A stretch of 64,000 nucleotides of DNA from assembly GCA_037447605.1 (NCBI GenBank), contig CM074820.1:868001-932000 (forward strand), in the 5' to 3' direction. The position numbers and the translations under genes are program-made. The notes under the pieces are model-generated. The model had not been told where the DNA came from. It ran no database searches and saw only the letters and a program-made list of their open reading frames with translations. Origin of the DNA: Zygnema circumcarinatum SAG 698-1b (Eukaryota; Plantae; Zygnematophyceae). Position 1 is the stretch's first letter. The number at the start of each line of letters is the position of its first letter. Below are positions 15,108-26,725 of this stretch, piece by piece.

Positions 15108-15702
15108 ATGATATCGTCCTCTACCTCCTCCCACTTCCTCCCATCTTCCCTTCCCCTCCTTCTCCCCTCCCTCCTCCTCCTCCTCCTGCTCCCCTCCGCT
15201 TTCGCTGAAACCCTAAACTCTCCCCCTCCACCTTCCACTCCTGCTCTGACCTCTGAAGCCGGATATGAGATCCGAGAAGTGGAGCGGTCTCTGAGGAGCT
15301 ATGGAACTCAGAGCACGACCGCCACTCTCCTTTTCAATACGACAAATGTGGGAGCCGCCATGGCTGAGCTTCCAGGAGCGACTTTTCTCGCTCCCAAAAA
15401 CTCGGCATGGAGCAGTTTGGGGAGTCAGGAGGGAGGGCCGCAGCTGGAGCTGCTCCTTGCGGGGGCGATGGGGAACGTGGTTTTGATCAACCTTTTGAAG
15501 TATCACATCGTCACGGAGTATTTGCTGTACGTGGATCTGCAGGTGATGCTCTGAAGAGAAAGAAAAGAATTTAAGTGAAGGAGAGTTTCTGTGTTCTCTG
15601 TGTGATTTCTGCATCATGGAGTCGGGTGATTTGTCGATTTCTTTTCGATGATCATGTCTGAACTCCGTCTTCCTCCCGTTCTCTCTCTCCCTCTCTCGCC
15701 CC

Positions 15703-15734
<32 letters not shown>

Positions 15735-16282
15735 ACCTCTACCTCTCTCTCTCACTTCCCTCCTTCTATCCCTTTCTGTCTCTCTCCCCTCCCTCCTTGC
15801 TTTATTTATGTTATTTTGGCTCGCAGTTAACCGACAAGGGCGCAGGTCTTCCCACTCTCCTCAATCAGTCTGTGTACATATCACCCTATGACGGCCAGAA
15901 TTTCTTTTACACAAATTCATCCGAACCTGAGAAAAATTCGACGAGTGATGAGCCGGACATCCACCAGGACGGAGTCATCTCTGTTCAGGGCATATCGGAG
16001 GTCCTCATTCCGGACCTCTCTCTCCTTTGGTTTAGCGATTTTGAGGATGAGGGAGGAGGCCCGGGAGCCGCTCCTTCTCCCTCTCCCACTTTTCCGGTTT
16101 TCATTCCACAGTCAGTGGGCGAGCAGAGCCCTCCATCTCCGCAGTCTCTGGATTCGTTAAATATGATGTCAGGTGCTTACCGAATCTCACATTGTTTCAT
16201 TGGTAGAAGTAGGAGGGACCGGTGGGAGATGAAGGGGAAAATAAGGAAGTATTCGGAGGCTGTTTGCACGTGTGTGGGTTGA
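15108..16282 (+). CDS. FLA: Fasciclin-like arabinogalactan protein (single FAS1 domain); 3' end uncertain
   Basis: Exon 15108-15542 joins in phase 0 to an exon from 15827. Signal peptide LLLPSLLLLLLLPSAFA. FAS1 H1 TFLAPKNSAW, central LLKYHIV, H2 DIHQDGVISVQGISEVLIP, then Pro/Ser/Ala-rich GAAPSPSP...SPPSP. A possible donor at 16173 could add downstream exons. Confidence 0.85.
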
Positions 16283-17206: not shown

Positions 17207-20200
17207 CTAAAATCGGAGCTTTCTGGTCACACATTGTTCTAGAAAGGAGGTGGCTTCTTCCTCCCGGTACCGGTGACCCCGCCGCGGGAGACTGTCCAGC
17301 TGTCTGCTCACCCACGAGATCAAAGGGTCTACTCCTAAGTTGTTCCCCATCTGCAGGAGGTTTCAGAGCGAAGGGAAAACCTTTAGTTAGGAGATGGCGT
17401 CATGGGAGGTGGGTGATGGGTGATGGGTGATGGGTGATGGGTGATGGGTGATGGGTGATGGGTGATGGGTGATGGGTGATGGGTGATGGGTGATGGGTGA
17501 TGGGTGATGGGTGATGGTTGATGGGTGATGGGTGATGGGTGATGGGGGGATAGGAGATGAGAAATAATGATGGGAGATAGGAAATGGGGAATAGAGGATG
17601 GATGATGAGAGATGGGTGACGAAATATGGGAGGTGGGTGATGGATGCATGACGGGAGATGGGTGACATGCAGAATTTCAAAAAATAAAAAGAGGGAATTT
17701 TGCTAAAAGCGGGGGGCACTAGCATACTTCCACGTTTCATGGAGCATGCCAATCAGGCCAGCCAGGTGAAATAACCCGATTATGACTAAATTGGCCATGG
17801 ACAAACTTTACTGAGAGAGAAATGAGAGGAAGAGGGGGGCAGATGAAGAAAAGGGGCGGGAGAGAGAGAGTTTAGAGGACAGCAAAGGGAAACAGGAGAA
17901 ACACGGGAGAAGCACGAAGCAATGCCGAGACAGAGAGTGTGGAGAGAGAGGGTGGCCAGCTAAGATGGACGACAGAAAAACAACAGAAACATGCAAACGA
18001 GAAGAAAGGCCAAAAAAGGCATGCTGATTTAAACTTCAACCCCGCCATACTAAAGAATACCACTCTAAGTTTTGCTCCTTAACAACCCGATCTGACTCCA
18101 ATGGCCCTATCGTCTTGGCCTAAGCGCCTAAACAAAGACAGAGCAGAAGAGAAGAAGAACAAGAACAAGAAGAATAGAAAAATTGGTGATTCACTAGAAG
18201 GAAGAGAAGTGAACGAGGAAAGTGGAAAATTTCACCCACCTGGTCATATTTCAAGCTCAAGCAGTTCATCTCTTTTGCTGCGAGTTTTTTGTCATCTTCG
18301 TGCACATTGGGAGGCATCAACTCCAACACTGCCGTTCCGGGTTTCAGAAAAACGACATTGTCCATAGAATGGTCCATCCACGGCCCTATCATTAAATCCG
18401 CACGGCTCAGCCCTAATACCTGCCCCTCCCCGAGAAAGAGAAAAGAAAGGGCAGGGAAGGGGGGGGGAGAGAGGGGGGGCAGAGAGGGGGGGAGAGAGGG
18501 GGGGAGAGAGGGGGGGGGAGAGGGGGGGAGAGAGGGGGGAGAGGGGGGGGAGAGAGGGGGAGAGAGGGGGAGAGAAGGGGGGAGAGAGGGGGGGGAGAGG
18601 GGGAGAGAGAGGGGGGAGAGGGGAGAGAGAGGGGGGGAGAGAGGAGGGGGAGAGGGGGGGAGAGAGGGGGGGAGAGAGGGGGAGAGAGAGAAAAGCCGCA
18701 TCATTCAGCTACCAGTGTGTATTATCAGGATTCCTTGAAGGTTCAGTTCTCCAAGCATCTTGCAGTTCTAGGCTTTTAAGGGTTTAAGGTACATAGGCTC
18801 TACGAAATGTAATCGTTTGACAGGTGGATTACAAAGGTCCAAAGAGTAGGGCTAAATACAGTAACCCCCCTCTGAAGGACCCCTCTCTGAATGATAAAAC
18901 TGTAAACGTATCTTCATGCCCTCTGATTGGCCCTCGATAAAATCGACCGTGCGATAGAACGGACAAAAATACGGACACGAGGCTTCAGATCTCGTGCGGC
19001 TTTACATGAAAATCAGTTCGCCGACCGATGAACTAATTAATCTAATCTTTGGGCTAATCTGCTCTCCACAGTTCAGTGAACTGAAGCACGTGTTTAACAT
19101 CGCATGCGATGTACGAATTTAGCGCATGCGCTGTACATATTTCTGCACGTGTGGACTTGCTTCCCCCCCTAAACTAAATGCCTCTATAAAAACCCTAAAA
19201 AACCCAAAAAACAAATAAACCTTAACCTTAATGTAACCCCACAGTCGGCCCCATTTCGAGAAAGAGTATAGTGGGGTTTTCAGGATTAGGAGTAGGAGAA
19301 AAAAAGTTGAAGCTTGCGAGTTTGTGGGCTTTTACCTTGACAGAGCAGAACTCTCCTCGGGGAACAAGCGCTATTTGGCAGCTAAGTCCCGTGTCGGCAC
19401 ACTCTTGAGCTATAAGACTCTCCACTTCCGTATAGTTGAACCACTCCATTTTTGCCCAATTGGGTTGGTCTCCCACAAACGCAACTCTCACATTGGCATC
19501 AGTGTCGTCGAGAACACTCATTGTGCCCTTTCTTGGAAAACTCCTGCAACAAGCAGGGGAAAGCAATCAGATGCGAATAGGAGAGAATGAGAAGAGGGGG
19601 GGAAGAGGAGGAAGGAGGGAGGGAGGAGGGGGGGGANNNNNNNNNNGGGGGGAAGGGGAGGAGAGGTGTGGAAGAGAGAGGAAGAGTGGCAAGAGAGGGA
19701 AAGTGCGGGAGGGCAGGAGAGGGGTGAGAAAAGAAGATGCCGAGTAGTATGAATGGGGATCGATGAATTTGAACGAACAACAAGGGGGGATATTATGATA
19801 TCTTTGAAATTTGAACAGCATCCACAAACTTTTGGCTCCCTAAACCTCTGCTGACCAGCCCCACTCTCTCCCTCACTCTCACCTGCAAAACGCATGAACT
19901 GTTCTCCTCATAATATGCAGATCCTTATTGCACTCGTCTGAATTCATAGTATCCCGCTGCCTTGCAACCACTGAATAATCGAAACATTCGGGAGTTTTTC
20001 CATCTGCTGGCATGTAAGGTATTGCATTATGGCCCAAAAGTGCTCTCATAACCATTCCTGCCCAGGGGCTAAGCTGAGTTCTAAGCAGGCCATCATGGTA
20101 TAAGAGAACACGTGCAGGGCCAAAACACCCATGCTCTTCTCTCCAAGATAAGAAACTTGAAACAAGATTAAGCATAGTGAACCGGCCCTCAAATCCTTGC

Positions 20201-23200
20201 GGAGAATGAATCACAAAAGTAGTCCCCGATATTTGAGTTGCATCGTTAGGGATTGCTCCATAGGTGAGGAGAGCATAGCGGTTTGTGGTGACGTCAGATG
20301 GTTTTTGATCATTATCACCCTGCATATGAAAAGCGCCATTTCATGCTTTAAGGCGAACTGACGGTAGGGGTGGAAATGTGAAACATTGAACTCAGCCGAT
20401 ATGGAAAAGTTAGACATATGCGAAAAATCGTCATTTGAATTTGGATTTAGAAAATGTTTTTAAGGTTTGATACCTTACCTGGATGCAAAGCACTGCCCCT
20501 CGCACATTCTCTGACGGAATGATTGCCAAGTCTGCAAAAAATTGCCTCTCGAGAAATGGGGTTCTGCCCATGAATTGGAGGCTGGTTTGATGCTCTGAAG
20601 GATTGAAAATGGGACGGAACGATCCCGCCATCGCGGTGCCGAGTCTCCTTCTTCGAGAAAGCACAATGGCCTTATTTCGTTCAAAGTAAGTGACTGTTTC
20701 AGAGGTATTTCGGAGAGGCATGTATCCAAGAAAGCCCTCGATGTCATTCATGCACACACTCCTGAAGAAGGAGAAACAGAAAGCAAAAGTTCAATGAAGA
20801 ACGTTGAGTGAAGAAGAAGAAGAAGAAGAATCCCTCTTTGGAATAACATATAACAAAATGTAACAGATTGTAGTTTTAAGAATGCAGAATGACCTATGAA
20901 GTTTCCATGCCTAAGATGATATCACGCCCCACTGCTTTGCTGCATGAAGGTATATCAGTTAAGGAAGCATAATGGAAATAAAAAGAGAGAAAAAATGTAC
21001 CTTGACACATCATGGCTTCCACGGGAAGAGAGACCCGACGTTGTTCCATAGTCGAGCTTTGAAGGGTCTTCCATTAGAAGAGGAGGAAGACCTGACAACT
21101 GAGTTACTAGAAAGTTCATTGTGATATCTTCACAATTCTTATGAAAGTCAATGTAGTCTCGAGCAGCTTGTGGGGTGTTGCATGTGTAGGCTCTCAAGTA
21201 GTCTCCATGCATGATGAACATTTTTGTGAGAACCATGGAGTATTCCTGCTTAGGTCTCAACACATAGGCCAACTGCCTTGTTTCCGGAACTCTGAAATGG
21301 GCTCGTGGGAAAAACCCCACAAGTCTGTACGGACTTTCCATCCACCTTTCAAAAGCTATTCTTAAAGCATTAACGCTGACCTCAATGTCGTCATCACATA
21401 ACAAAATTGCTTCCGTTTCAAGGGACTTGATGGGTTTGAACCGATCGTTCAGACTATCGATTCCCGAGTACAGAATCTCTACAGGTTTTGAGACATTGAA
21501 GTAGGAAGGCTTGAACGGTTCCACCTTGGTGTTTCCCCAAACGATGTAAATTTTATGGACAAAATCTAACGATGCATATCTTCGAATCATATACATTAAC
21601 AGGTCGAATCGATCGAAGCAGTTCATCACCACACTTATTTTGTCCTTCACCAGATGACCCCTGCATTACTCCAACCAACCCACCATACTCAGTGCCTCTT
21701 ATAACCATACAGAGAAGAAACAAACAGTACAGTACGAAAACTAGTAAAACAAAGCAGGACAGCAAGCATATGTAGCCATATAGCCACCGCTTTCGCACTC
21801 AACTTCCGGCAAAATTCCCCTAGCTCTATCCAGCTTTATGATAACCTCTCCATTGAAAAAAAAACTGGACAATGTAGCTCCCCATTTAAAGAGACTTTCT
21901 CTAAAAATCAAGAGGGAGAGACGACGGGAGGGCGAGAGTTGGGGAATCAGAGTGACTAGAAGATGATGAAGGTCAAATGAAATGATTTTAACTGGTGTAT
22001 GACCTCATAATGGGGATGGTTTCAGTCTACCTTGCATAAGCCATGTAGTCTCTCTGACATTCCTCTGCAAGCTGAGGTGGCATTTTTGTCGAATCATTAT
22101 GGTACCGAATCATGGCTGTTCTTCCAATCGTATAGTACACGTCATCATACACTTGCCACCACATCCAATCGAACTGCCGAGTTGTTGGAAACTGCAACAT
22201 TCTCATCAACACAGATCTTCATTAATTTTATTAAGTCTTTCCCATCTCTACTGCATAGGGATCGATCACATCTGACCTAAAGGAGGCAGTAAAAACCACC
22301 ACCGCTTTCTAATAGACCGGGGACCATAATGAGCATTTGGTTCTATACCGGATGCAGGGGGGTTGCTCGTATTACAGTGACTTTTGACAAGTAATACTAC
22401 ATTGAAAAAGTGAAAGCAAGATCTTTGCATTACCTGCTTGTCCATCATCATATTCCAAGGCTTGGTGTTCCCCGAGAAATGCAAAACTTTGAGTCCAGGT
22501 GCAATGAACTGCTTCCAGGCTGGAGACACTGAGATTCGAACCAATGCATTGTATGTGTAGTTCAGATGATGCTCAGGTCCTTGTCTATACCAATTGGCAA
22601 AGTAGCTATTCAGAAAGCCCTGGTCTCCCACGTTGGGAGAGATTGTTGTAGCAACCTGAGGGACGAGGTTCGCAGAAAAAAAACGGAAAATGTCACAATG
22701 TTTAGTTTATACAAATATTCTTCATACCAGTTAAAAGGTACTTTTTTGACCTTTCAGGCCAGACCACAAATGAGGTTAGCCAAGAACCTAATTTTCCTCC
22801 TGATCAGCTGGTCAGTTTTGAAATCTCAAGTTCAGACAGCTTGTGCTTTGCCCAACTTCTGAAGGTTACAGAGATTGAAGACTAAGATTACTCAAAAAAA
22901 GCAAAGCAACGCCCACTTGTTGCTGTGAGCTGCTAGCTAACTAAAGCTTTGAAAGATTATAACATTTCATCTGCATGATTGCATTGCACATTTTTCTTGT
23001 TGAGCCACCTGGCCTTCATTAATAATTTGAGACAAGGTTCAACATTTTCTTATAGAATTTAGTGAAGATATTCAACAGCTGCCATCCAGTTAGGTGTTTC
23101 ATCTGTCTCCGTACATACTAAATTGTTTCATCTATTAGCTTACTAAAAAATACTAGTGGCACTCCTCCTTTTGCCCTTTAAATAGGCTCTTTCTGAACCC

Positions 23201-25011
23201 ATGTTTTTATTGAAGCAAGTAAACGTCATGCAAAACCAATTCTCCCTCAACTTCTAACCATGAGAATTTCCTATGCTTAGGAAAGTTTTCAGGGAAAAGA
23301 GGCTCTCGCTCAGCGAATCGTTTGAGAAAGAAAAATTTCCAGTCTACGCCAAACTCAGAGCTTCTTCTCTGCCCATTCTCTTCACAGAAGCCAATGGGAA
23401 AATCTACAGATCTGACAGCTTTTCAAACAGGAACTCAGAAAGCACAAGCCATGAGTTATCTGTACAGATAATCCCTTGCCATTGGCTAATCTTCTTTAAT
23501 TCGCTGCTGCAGAATTCAAGAGTGTTTTCCAAAGTAAAGATACAGAAAATTACCTTTGTAATCATGTCTTTGAAAACTGCACGGTTTGGCTCCAAGACCA
23601 TAAAGCCACTGTTGAACTTGTCTGGGGGGAGCGTGTCTGGGACAGCAGCCATCTCCGGGCGGGAAAAGACATCGTCAACATTATCGATTACAAGAAGATC
23701 GCTGTCCAAGTAGATAATTTTCTTGTATTGTATCATATTCCACATGAGGAGTTTTGAGTACCTGCTCCCAACCATGGCAAAAACCAATCTGTTGCAATGC
23801 ATGGCACTAAGCCCACAAATGCCTGGAAACTCCACTCTCCGCCACACGCTTTCAAATACAGTTTTTTATCATCTTCTTCACTTTGGCTGAATAAGGTCAA
23901 TTCGACAACGACAGAAGTTTAAATTCAACAAGAAGGGATAGGCTAGTATGTAAGGGGTAAGTGATAGACTTCAACTTCGACATCAAACTCTTTAAATGTG
24001 TTAGGGCAGGACTAGTCATGATTGCGATTTGTAAGCATTCATTCGGAAATGAAGTAAACAATTGATTAATGATATTGTCCAGACTACACTGTACATCTTA
24101 ATCCATCCAAATTCAACTCTCAAAAAACTTAAACGGTCGATACATTCGAGCTAATTGATGGTCTACACTACACACATTGTATGCTTAGGTCGATCCTAAT
24201 TCCAGCCCAAACTTCACTACGATGGAAAAGATTTGGGAAAGGTATGCATTCAAAAAATTGAGCTTTTAGGAATTTTAGACTTTTGCGCAACTGGACGACT
24301 GAAAATAATAGTGAGTGGACCTATTTTTGGAGCAAATTTGGGAGCTGAAGGGAGTATCCTTCAGTAAAGACTTTTGAGCCACAAATAATACGCATTTACG
24401 CAATCGTAGACCCCTCAAACGTTAAGAAAACCACTTAATGACTGTAGATCGTGATAGAATGTGAAGCATTCTTGCTGACAATGACAATGTACGTACCGGC
24501 AGGGTTTGTTGATTGCGAGACGATCTGCTGTGACTGCAAATGGATACTTCACTGGATTTGTGATGGGTTCAATGATTGCCCCCAGCACCTTCAAGGCATC
24601 CAGAGTGCGGTTTGAAACGTTGAGAGCGAGCACTACCACGTCGTGCGGAGTGCCTGTCCTCTTTACAGAATGCACCAAAACTGCCGTTGCCTCCGCCATG
24701 ACATCGTCGCAGAGAAGGGTTACATAGGCGTACTTTGCATGGGAATTGCCATCAAGAGATGGTTCTCCGAGGGAAGGAGAGGAGATGAGAGCGGGGCCAA
24801 GAGAAAGGTGCCACAGACCGGCGAGAAAAAGGACCAAGGAGAGCCGGGAAACCATCTTTCTCCACTGTATGAAGCCCTTTGCAGGCTGCAGAGGCGATTT
24901 TCCTGGTGTCTTGCTCGCAGATTGCAGAGTGCTGAGGCCATTTCTGGAGGGAGACCTCTGAACCGCGGCGCTGCCATTGCGGATCGGAGTTTTGGAGCCA
25001 ACTCCCGCCAT
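17207..25011 (-). CDS. Type II membrane three-domain glycosyltransferase: GT8 (glycogenin/IPUT1-like) + GT64 (EXTL/GMT1/GINT1-like) + GT61-like domain, ~1005 aa
   Basis: Exons 25011-24497, 23761-23554, 22655-22434, 22191-22031, 21660-21001, 20761-20479, 20319-19883, 19543-19336, 18419-18240 and (less certain) 17350-17207. All are GT-AG and phase-compatible, 3018 nt in total. GT8: AYVTLL, YSKL, YLDSD, FNSG, GDQGFLN, HFSGNTKPW, WWQVYD. GT64: SLNDRF, CDDD, LVGFFPR, YSMVLT, NCEDI, GYMPL. Third domain: LLYHDGLLR, PECFDYSVV, VFLKPGTAVLELMP. Confidence 0.8.
17411..17543 (+). repeat. (GGGTGAT)19 heptamer tandem repeat
   Basis: 19 units with one GGTTGAT variant. It lies in the putative last intron of the glycosyltransferase gene. 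Confidence 0.95.
18452..18692 (+). repeat. G/A-only low-complexity tract in glycosyltransferase intron 8
   Basis: Repeats of GGGGGGAGAGA; pyrimidine-rich on the sense strand just upstream of the acceptor. Confidence 0.9.
19637..19646. other. Assembly gap (10 N); further 10-N gaps at 26428, 31763, 36970, 38835 and 60057
   Basis: Runs of exactly ten N, i.e. placeholder gaps of unknown true size. Confidence 0.98.
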
Positions 25012-25654
25012 GCAGCTGCTCCAATCAGGGCAAGCTCGCTACGCAAGAAGGAGAGCCGAAGTCTGCTGCTCAATAGGCATGCACAGTGCTGACTAGAAGG
25101 TGGCGCCGGGGGCATGCCCTGCTGCGGATGTGTTCATGGACAGGTGTGGGATGAGATTTTGACAAGCTGTTTCTACGCGAGCAGAAGCAAGCAGGCAATG
25201 CATGCATGCTGGAATGCCTTGCTGTAGCGCCACCACCTCCATGGCCTGCTCACCCCCCCATTGCAGCGAGACGCATCATCTCCTGCAACCATAATCCATC
25301 TCAAAATAACATCATGCGATGAGATGATATATAATATATGCGATCGCCGCCAGCCACCTGCTGGAAGGCAAGTGTTTCCCAGTCCGAAAGGAAAGCCTGC
25401 CCTGCCCTGCCCTGCCCTGCCTTGCCCTGCCCCGCCTTGCCCTGCCCTGCCCTCAGTGCAGAGCCAACTGGCAGAGGGGGAGGCAGCCAGGAGGGGAGGG
25501 AGCTTGCCTGCCCTAAAGTGAAGGCGAGGTGGAATGCGCGTCCACCGGCGGAGGTGCGGATCAACTCAACGCACCTTTCACAGGTCTAATGGAGAGTCAC
25601 AGTACAGATTCGTACGGTCTGTACGTGAGGAGAGAGAGTTGAGAATTTCGAGTT

Positions 25655-26725
25655 AAATTTTGGAAAATGATACAGCGGCCCCACCTTTTGGATATCGGCG
25701 CCCCCTTTTGGAAAAAAAATGTACTTTTTTTTTGGCTAATCAGCCCCCCCCCTTGGATCTTTCGGGAGGAGAGATCTTGTAGACAATCGGACCCCGCGCC
25801 TCGCGCGCAGGATCCGACCGTGCACCGACGTACGGCACCGCGCATCGCGGCGTGGCCCGCGAGATGCGGCGAGCCTACGGAAACGTTGTCCTCACCTGAC
25901 CCGTTTGGGTCAGAGGTTGCCACGTGGCAGTCTGCCATTGGAAAGCCCTGCTGCCGGTCCCCCATGCCGATACAGTGGACACCCATAATATTTTCGCCAT
26001 GGTTTCGGCAAATACTGGGCAAAAATATTGTAATTTGCAAATATAAGGTCCGTGTTACCAATAGGCGAGCGGTATTATGTTAGAGTTCATGTCTGTTCGT
26101 ATGGTTCGTATCGTATCGTATCGTACCGTGATTTAGATACACGAGCTCCTATTGGTGCCGTACGTATATCGTATGACTCAGAGATTTTATTCGTACTTAC
26201 CGTACAGCGTAAAAGCGTGACCCATGTTTGAAATCCGTTTCGATTAACAGATTTTGTATTGGAGAAAAGGTCAGGTTAGGTTAACACCCCTAATACGTTA
26301 ACATTGAGTTACCGTACAAAAAGGTGGTTTCGGCAAAATCGGGGCAAATTTCTTGGGGACGCACTGTACAAGGTGGAAAATATTATGGGTGTCCACTGTA
26401 TCGGCATGGGGGACCGGCAGCAGGGCTNNNNNNNNNNTCCAATGGCAGACTGCCACGTGGCAACCTCTGACCCAAACGGGTCAGGTGAGGACAACGTTTC
26501 CGTAGGCTCGCCGCATCTCGCGGGCCACGCCGCGATGCGCGGTGCCGTACGTCGGTGCACGGTCGGATCCTGCGCGCGAGGCGCGGGGTCCGATTGTCTA
26601 CAAGATCTCTCCTCCCGAAAGATCCAAGGGGGGGGGCTGATTAGCCAAAAAAAAAGTACATTTTTTTTCCAAAAGGGGGCGCCGATATCCAAAAAGTGGG
26701 GCCGCTGTATCATTTTCCAAAATTT
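25655..26725. repeat. ~340-bp near-perfect inverted repeat (foldback-like structure)
   Basis: 25655-25995 is the reverse complement of 26376-26725 (one clear substitution; 10-N gap at 26428-26437 in the right arm). Inner boundaries TA|CAGCGGCCCC at 25673 and GGGGCCGCTG|TA at 26707. Confidence 0.85.
25973..26398. mobile_element. Tc1/mariner-type MITE, copy 1
   Basis: TA|CAGTGGACACCCATAATATTTTC ... GAAAATATTATGGGTGTCCACTG|TA. Subterminal sequence is shared in inverted orientation with 27499-27976. Confidence 0.65.

What the first reader, a model, noticed from the sequence alone, without database searches (positions are those of the whole stretch)
17207..25011. GT8-GT64-GT61-like triple glycosyltransferase fusion: a possible single-polypeptide glycan (GIPC head-group) assembly line
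Seen: ten phase-compatible GT-AG exons give one ~1005-aa protein with a single N-terminal membrane anchor, a GT8 domain with intact DxD (YLDSD), a GT64 domain with intact CDDD and NCEDI, and a third domain. The GT64 exon has an in-frame stop just upstream and no anchor of its own, so it needs the GT8 exons. GT64 runs on into the linker toward the third domain inside one exon (20761-20479) with no stop. Established: in Arabidopsis, GIPC sphingolipid head groups are built by IPUT1 (GT8, GlcA onto IPC) and then GMT1 or GINT1 (GT64, Man or GlcN(Ac) onto GlcA), as separate genes; GT61 enzymes add pentoses. The third domain resembles the uncharacterised At4g33590/At4g33600-type GT61-like proteins as I recall them. 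Inference: domain order mirrors reaction order, so this may be a channelling multi-step enzyme, and a Rosetta-stone hint that the orphan family acts on GIPC-type glycans. I do not know of this architecture being described.
Basis: partly seen in the sequence, partly recalled or inferred. Interest (0 to 1): 0.9.

Follow-up and report, generated by a model that had tools for sequence, protein, structure and literature searches.

The report
Algal triple sugar-transferase, third module dead
A green alga close to land plants makes one spliced mRNA for a membrane-anchored protein with three sugar-transferase modules, of which the first two look active and the third has lost its catalytic residues, so it is more likely a two-step glycan builder with a scaffold than the proposed three-step sphingolipid assembly line.

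Summary
The fusion gene is real. Ten GT-AG exons give 1005 aa. Three intron-less runs from three studies show introns 1-7 spliced exactly, and one 3.7-kb contig runs from exon 1 into exon 9. The N gap lies inside intron 7 and is spliced out. Full-length orthologs exist in Closterium and in another transcriptome.

GT8 and GT64 keep their catalytic motifs. The third module folds like GT61 (POMGNT2) but has lost all three GT61 catalytic motifs, here and in its orthologs, so it is probably a conserved pseudo-enzyme.

The GIPC reading is weak. The GT8 belongs to a glycogenin-like subfamily and lacks IPUT1's multi-membrane tail. The GT64 groups apart from GMT1. The GT8-GT64 core also occurs in red algae, where it is already named, and in Mucorales, which lack IPC.

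Best reading: a Golgi two-step alpha-glycosyltransferase for an unknown acidic wall or glycoprotein glycan, with a non-catalytic third module. Paralogs in related algae have lost other modules, which suggests an EXT1/EXT2-like complex (inferred). The scan noted the same architecture at two other loci of this genome, with degenerate GT64. I found no paper on the triple form.

The parts
24497..25011 (-). Exon 1: start codon, cytosolic tail, single membrane anchor (aa 58-76), stem, start of GT8 (TLLCDD, NKPC)
23554..23761 (-). Exon 2: GT8, RYSKL and DxD (YLDSD, 23712-23698)
22434..22655 (-). Exon 3: GT8, NVGDQG and HFSGNTKPW motifs intact
22031..22191 (-). Exon 4: end of GT8 and linker
21001..21660 (-). 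Exon 5: GT64 domain with intact F-D-R, NDRF, CDDD, GFFPRAH and NCEDI
20479..20761 (-). Exon 6: end of GT64, linker and start of the GT61-like module in one open exon
19883..20319 (-). Exon 7: GT61-like N-lobe; NxxH replaced by GRFT (FEGRFT, 20193-20176)
19637..19646 (.). Assembly gap (10 N) inside intron 7, in a C/T-rich tract; spliced out of the transcripts
19336..19543 (-). Exon 8: GT61-like C-lobe; both arginines of RxxxRxxxN missing (19473-19435)
18240..18419 (-). Exon 9: GT61-like C-lobe; HGAxxT replaced (GPWMDHSMDN, 18386-18357)
   Evidence: (loose end)
25012..25200 (-). 5' untranslated region, covered by the spliced contigs at least to 25200 (contig length suggests about 25384)

Best explanation
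A type II Golgi membrane protein with two working glycosyltransferase modules and one dead one. Shown: one spliced, conserved 1005-aa frame; intact GT8 and GT64 motifs; a GT61 fold without GT61 catalytic residues. Inferred: the glycogenin-like GT8 and the exostosin-like GT64, both retaining GT-A enzymes, add two different sugars in alpha linkage in turn to the same acceptor. Probably GT8 adds a uronic acid or hexose and GT64 adds a hexosamine or hexose from a UDP-sugar onto glucuronic acid. The product is most likely an acidic wall, mucilage or glycoprotein glycan, not the GIPC head group. The pseudo-GT61 module is kept as an acceptor-binding or docking part. It may pair this protein with its paralogs, which have lost GT64 (and in one type GT8 too), as EXT1 pairs with EXT2.
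For: Splicing and frame. Orthologs colinear over all ten exons at 58-86% (P0093) and 38-81% (Closterium). GT8 motifs match glycogenin (E 1e-37) and a family signature shared with red algae and Mucorales. GT64 keeps counterparts of EXTL3 Tyr670 (as Phe), Arg672, Asn723 and Asp745/746 (PMC9178029). Third module of ortholog P0093: pLDDT 89, best PDB match POMGNT2 (E 1.5e-8), Atlas plant GT61 TM 0.77, yet all three motifs of 10.1101/2025.07.18.665579 and the N-R-R triad of PMC13123520 are gone in every ortholog seen. It is still under constraint: pN 0.23-0.30 against pS 0.59-0.85. Three paralog types with different dead modules. Known bi-domain Golgi fusions make alternating polysaccharides (PMC9178029).
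Against: No activity, donor or acceptor was measured. Motif loss predicts inactivity but does not prove it; the replacement residues are themselves conserved. GT64 enzymes of plants with known activity (GMT1, GINT1) act on GIPC. Hetero-complex formation is only an analogy. I could not read the two paralogs of this genome myself. Trees were quick searches with SH-aLRT support only.
Confidence: 0.5

Rival explanations
1. Two-step GIPC enzyme: GT8 puts glucuronic acid on IPC (or on a longer GIPC) and GT64 adds the next hexose or hexosamine, with a dead GT61 module as scaffold.
For: Both GIPC steps are alpha-linked and are made by a GT8 and a GT64 in Arabidopsis (established knowledge; PMC9113257). 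Both modules are intact here. The top Atlas feature hit for the GT8 part carries an automatic PGSIP6 name, though it is a mostly bacterial cluster.
Against: No IPUT1-type multi-membrane tail. Green and red algae have their own PGSIP6 orthologs (PMC3797821), and an unchecked note places an IPUT1 gene elsewhere in this genome (s1-387250). GT64 clade is apart from GMT1. Mucorales keep the same GT8 with intact motifs but lack IPC (PMC11595932).
Confidence: 0.2
2. Three-step assembly line: the third module is an active transferase with a rewired site, for example for a non-UDP donor or another chemistry.
For: The GT61 fold is complete and confidently modelled. The substitute motifs (FEGRF, GPWxDxxxDN) are conserved across orthologs. 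Variant triads (F/Y-R-R, G-R-R) exist in GT61 (PMC13123520).
Against: Both proposed catalytic histidines, the asparagine and both phosphate-binding arginines are lost together; the described variants keep both arginines.
Confidence: 0.1
3. Only one of the two intact modules matters in vivo, or they act on different acceptors; the fusion serves co-localisation and dosage, not sequential transfer.
For: GT64 is degenerate in Mucorales and in several algal paralogs while GT8 is kept, so GT8 can work without an active GT64 in the same chain. In EXTL3 the two sites are far apart and one is inactive (PMC9178029).
Against: Both modules are intact and the best-conserved parts of this ortholog group (72-86% identity), and both are intact in red algal and other two-domain forms.
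Confidence: 0.2

Closest known systems
GT8-GT64 double-module enzymes of red algae (named in the Delisea pulchra genome preprint, 10.64898/2026.03.31.715562)
   Same: Same two domains in the same order, same GT8 signature (LLC, NKPCRYSKL, NxGDQGFLN), GT64 in the same clade; found in Galdieria, Cyanidium, Mucorales and unassigned eukaryote contigs.
   Different: This protein adds a C-terminal pseudo-GT61 module, seen only in zygnematophyte-type proteins. The red algal proteins are uncharacterised; the sulfated-galactan role given in the preprint is a suggestion.
Bi-domain exostosins EXT1/EXT2/EXTL3 (GT47-GT64) and LARGE (GT8-GT49)
   Same: Type II Golgi fusion of transferases, GT64 site like EXTL3, dead modules kept in paralogs.
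   Different: Partner domain is GT8, not GT47; both intact modules are retaining; product unknown; no complex shown.
Arabidopsis GIPC enzymes IPUT1 (GT8) and GMT1/GINT1 (GT64)
   Same: Same two CAZy families.
   Different: Not the IPUT1 architecture, GT64 outside the GMT1 branch (34% identity), and the core is present in fungi without IPC.
GT61 family (POMGNT2, EOGT, XAT) and the free-standing uncharacterised land-plant GT61-like proteins (e.g. Amborella XP_020529036)
   Same: Same GT-B fold and detectable homology.
   Different: The fused modules form their own branch (SH 100). This one lacks all catalytic motifs, which the free-standing proteins keep.

Membership tests
GT8 (glycogenin-like branch) | PF01501 match with DxD, GDQG and HxxGxxKPW motifs | tested here: met
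IPUT1/PGSIP6 | GT8 followed by several C-terminal membrane helices (own knowledge; TM5 and TM6 are named in PMC12971971) | tested here: not met
   One membrane segment only; GT64 follows GT8
IPUT1/PGSIP6 | Groups with PGSIP6 in a GT8 tree | not testable with these tools
   No IPUT1 sequence was returned by any search; the tree lacks it
IPUT1/PGSIP6 | Transfers GlcA to IPC | not testable with these tools
   Needs an assay
GT64 | PF09258 match with DDD and NCED motifs and nucleotide-binding residues | tested here: met
GMT1/EPC1 clade of GT64 | Groups with GMT1; single GT64 domain | tested here: not met
   Fusion GT64s form a separate branch (SH 93, quick tree, one GMT1 row) and differ at the nucleotide pocket (F-D-R, W-G-N against W-K-Q, W-S-E)
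GINT1 clade of GT64 | Groups with GINT1 | not testable with these tools
GT61 | GT-B fold and homology to POMGNT2/EOGT | tested here: met
   Ortholog model matches POMGNT2; family profile hits EOGT and POMGNT2 at about 1e-8; 26 of 46 homologs hit PF04577
GT61 (active enzymes) | NxxHxxxD, RxxxRxxxN and HGAxxT motifs (N-R-R triad, catalytic His) | tested here: not met
   All replaced in the window protein and its orthologs
GT8-GT64 double-module family | GT8 with the NK(P/A)CRYSKL signature fused N-terminal to a GT64 of the fusion clade | tested here: met
   (signature defined here from the homologs, not from a paper)
EXT1/EXT2-like hetero-complex | Paralogs with complementary dead modules bind each other and work together | tested here: inconclusive
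   Complementary motif loss seen; binding not testable
At4g33590/At4g33600 family | Homology to these Arabidopsis proteins | not testable with these tools
   Homologs from Amborella, Bauhinia, Psilotum and Diphasiastrum were found, but not the Arabidopsis sequences

The most novel reading that the evidence does not exclude
Zygnematophyte algae build an undescribed glycan with a three-subunit complex of GT8-GT64-GT61 paralogs, each with different dead modules. This gene supplies the active GT8 and GT64, a second paralog supplies a partly intact GT61, and a third is a scaffold. That would tie the orphan land-plant GT61-like family to the product of an ancient eukaryotic GT8-GT64 enzyme.
Probability: 0.25. 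Interest if true: 0.78.

Novelty: new variant of a known kind. Interest (0 to 1): 0.52.

Why it matters
The GT8-GT64 pair is spread over red algae, Mucorales and streptophyte algae and has no known activity. This copy has both modules intact and is expressed, so it is the natural one to assay. [quoted passage not shown] The fused GT61-like module links that product to an uncharacterised GT61-like family that land plants keep as free-standing, motif-intact proteins. The complementary loss of active sites among paralogs gives a direct, testable prediction of a hetero-complex.

Tried and rejected
Artefact of the N gap: rejected; the gap is intronic and spliced over.

Two separate neighbouring genes: rejected; the 22031/21660 junction is spliced in three runs and orthologs are single proteins.

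A third GT77 module in red algal and Mucorales homologs: I first noted this from precomputed Pfam labels, then rejected it because PF03407 overlaps the GT8 domain.

GT61-like tails in other long GT8-GT64 proteins (L014, L017): not found by profile comparison; those tails are unrelated to each other.

Exon 7 against metagenome contigs: nothing. Viral and prokaryote collections gave only distant GT8s at 22-28%. NCBIfam: no hits.

Papers: ten searches; only one text names GT8-GT64 and none names the triple form. The GINT1 paper was not held. The careful GT64 tree did not finish, so the quick tree is used. The whole-protein model was poor (pLDDT 62, pTM 0.38), so no claim is made about domain packing.
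Full report
Observation. Every intron is GT-AG, the phases fit, and the sum is 3018 nt, or 1005 aa plus a stop. An in-frame stop sits two codons before the GT64 exon. The only hydrophobic segment is residues 58-76.

The gap. The ten Ns at 19637-19646 are in intron 7. Contigs of the DNA run X5 break on both sides of this low-complexity tract, so genomic continuity is not shown by DNA. Three other runs from three studies (X8, X7, X13) carry contigs that skip introns 1-7 at GT-AG ends, including the intron with the gap, while X5 shows no joints. These runs are not on record as RNA, but exact intron loss absent from the DNA run marks them as transcripts. In X8 one 3700-nt contig covers exons 1-8 and continues into the start of exon 9. 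A contig is not a single molecule, and the exon 9-10 junction was outside the stretch laid.

Method note. Whole-protein scans and folding used P0093, a database ortholog of the same length.

Conservation. P0093, a complete ORF from a transcriptome assembly, matches all ten exons in order at 58-86%, and Closterium proteins of about 940-957 aa match at 38-81%. More distant three-module proteins occur in Mesotaenium endlicherianum (P0040) and in other transcriptomes (P0028, P0044). Two-module GT8-GT64 proteins occur in Galdieria, Cyanidium, several Mucorales and unassigned eukaryote contigs. No land-plant protein with this fusion appeared, but the word-based searches are not exhaustive. Prokaryote and viral collections gave only distant GT8s.

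Module 1, GT8. The closest solved structures are glycogenins (E 1e-37) and the Skp1 galactosyltransferase GAT1. DxD, GDQG and HxxGxxKPW are intact. The fusion GT8s share a signature (LLC, NK(P/A)CRYSKL, NxGDQGFLN) and fall on one side of a quick tree, apart from glycogenins. No IPUT1 sequence was available for the tree. IPUT1 has several C-terminal membrane helices (own knowledge; PMC12971971 names TM5 and TM6); this protein has none.

Module 2, GT64. It matches EXTL3 at 1e-30. Counterparts of the EXTL3 UDP- and Mn-binding residues Tyr670 (Phe here), Arg672, Asn723 and Asp745/746 (PMC9178029) are present, as is NCED; the Asn697 position reads Gly-Asn. The fusion GT64s form one branch (SH 93) apart from a Rhododendron GMT1-like protein and from animal exostosins (quick tree, one GMT1 row, no GINT1). 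The pocket resembles UDP-using exostosins more than GMT1, which is a weak inference.

Module 3. Exon 7 finds a family of free-standing land-plant proteins from Amborella, Bauhinia, Psilotum and Diphasiastrum. Of 46 aligned members, 26 hit PF04577, and the profile hits EOGT and POMGNT2 at about 1e-8. The ortholog's module folds with pLDDT 89; its best PDB match is POMGNT2 and its best Atlas match a plant GT61 at TM 0.77. Active GT61 enzymes need NxxHxxxD, RxxxRxxxN and HGAxxT (10.1101/2025.07.18.665579; PMC13123520). The free-standing homologs have them. The window protein has GRFT, a stretch without either arginine, and PWMDHS, and its orthologs have equivalent losses. The module is still constrained (pN 0.23-0.30, pS 0.59-0.85 against L001). 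It is best read as a conserved pseudo-enzyme.

Paralogs. The fused third modules form one branch (SH 100) with three types. Type A (this gene, P0093, Closterium) has GT8 and GT64 intact and GT61 dead. Type B (P0040, P0044) has GT64 dead, a GT61 that keeps the HG histidine and some arginines, and in P0040 a GT8 with its DxD but one change in GDQG. Type C (P0028) is degenerate in all three. Earlier scan notes describe two more such genes in this genome whose descriptions fit types B and C (s1-332367, s1-378333). I could not read those loci, so I checked the pattern only in other species. They are leads, not support.

GIPC or not. In favour: GIPC cores are built by a GT8 and then a GT64. Against: the architecture and clade results above; separate PGSIP6 orthologs in green and red algae (PMC3797821); an unchecked note of an IPUT1 gene elsewhere in this genome (s1-387250); and Mucorales, which keep this GT8 intact yet lack IPC (PMC11595932). 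I put the two-step GIPC reading at 0.2 and the three-step reading at 0.1.

Mechanism. Shown: one expressed, conserved, single-anchor protein with two intact GT-A modules and one motif-less GT-B module. Inferred from family knowledge: both intact modules are retaining and would make alpha linkages; characterised GT64 enzymes add a sugar onto glucuronic acid; bi-domain Golgi fusions make alternating glycans, and EXTL3 keeps a dead module (PMC9178029). The most likely function is two-step or alternating synthesis of an acidic wall, mucilage or glycoprotein glycan, with module 3 binding acceptor or partner (0.5). A complex with the complementary paralogs is plausible but untested.

Novelty. The GT8-GT64 double module is already named in red algae, without a tested function (10.64898/2026.03.31.715562). 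Ten paper searches and the Zygnema genome paper's text and supplements gave no mention of the triple form; the library lacks most subscription papers. The proteins are in public databases as unnamed products. The scan has already noted the architecture twice in this genome. What this locus adds is the copy with both GT8 and GT64 intact and the complementary pattern of dead modules. Verdict: new variant of a known kind, interest 0.52.

Noticed in passing
window 15108-16282 (+): A convergent neighbour gene with a signal peptide and a fasciclin domain (PF02469, E 7e-5), like a fasciclin-type wall protein. No such neighbour was called beside the Closterium ortholog.
   Followed up: partly
window 25655-25995 and 26376-26725: A perfect inverted repeat of about 340 nt just upstream of the gene; the second arm contains the N gap at 26428-26437. 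Further 79-88% inverted pairs reach to 27964. It may be a fold-back element or an assembly artefact.
   Followed up: partly
window 17413-17539: A 7-nt tandem repeat in intron 9, and a long purine tract in intron 8 (18430-18720).
   Followed up: no
L008 6515-7771 and L011 2683-4143: A two-domain GT8-GT64 gene has a sulfotransferase-like gene directly downstream. The two loci look like the same organism, so this is one case.
   Followed up: partly
L014 2260-3327 and L017 4890-5822: Two other eukaryotic GT8-GT64 proteins carry 310-360 aa C-terminal tails with no Pfam, PDB or GT61 match and no likeness to each other.
   Followed up: partly
P0131, P0134, P0136, P0145 (Mucorales proteins): Mucorales keep an intact GT8 fused to a GT64 that has lost its DDD and NCED motifs, a parallel to the algal paralogs.
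   Followed up: partly
L001, L002, L051: One sequencing run (SRR9302961) holds an ortholog of this gene, a two-domain GT8-GT64 gene with no GT61-like part, and a degenerate-type paralog; whether they come from one organism is not known.
   Followed up: partly
P0140: A protein with the reverse order, GT64 then GT8, probably the other fusion family noted in s1-411227 and s1-319551.
   Followed up: no
whole window: About 1177 windows on 71 pieces imply a genome near 75 Mb. With the closest homologs in Closterium and Mesotaenium this fits Zygnema circumcarinatum (71 Mb, PMC11096116). This is an inference; the organism was not identified.
   Followed up: partly
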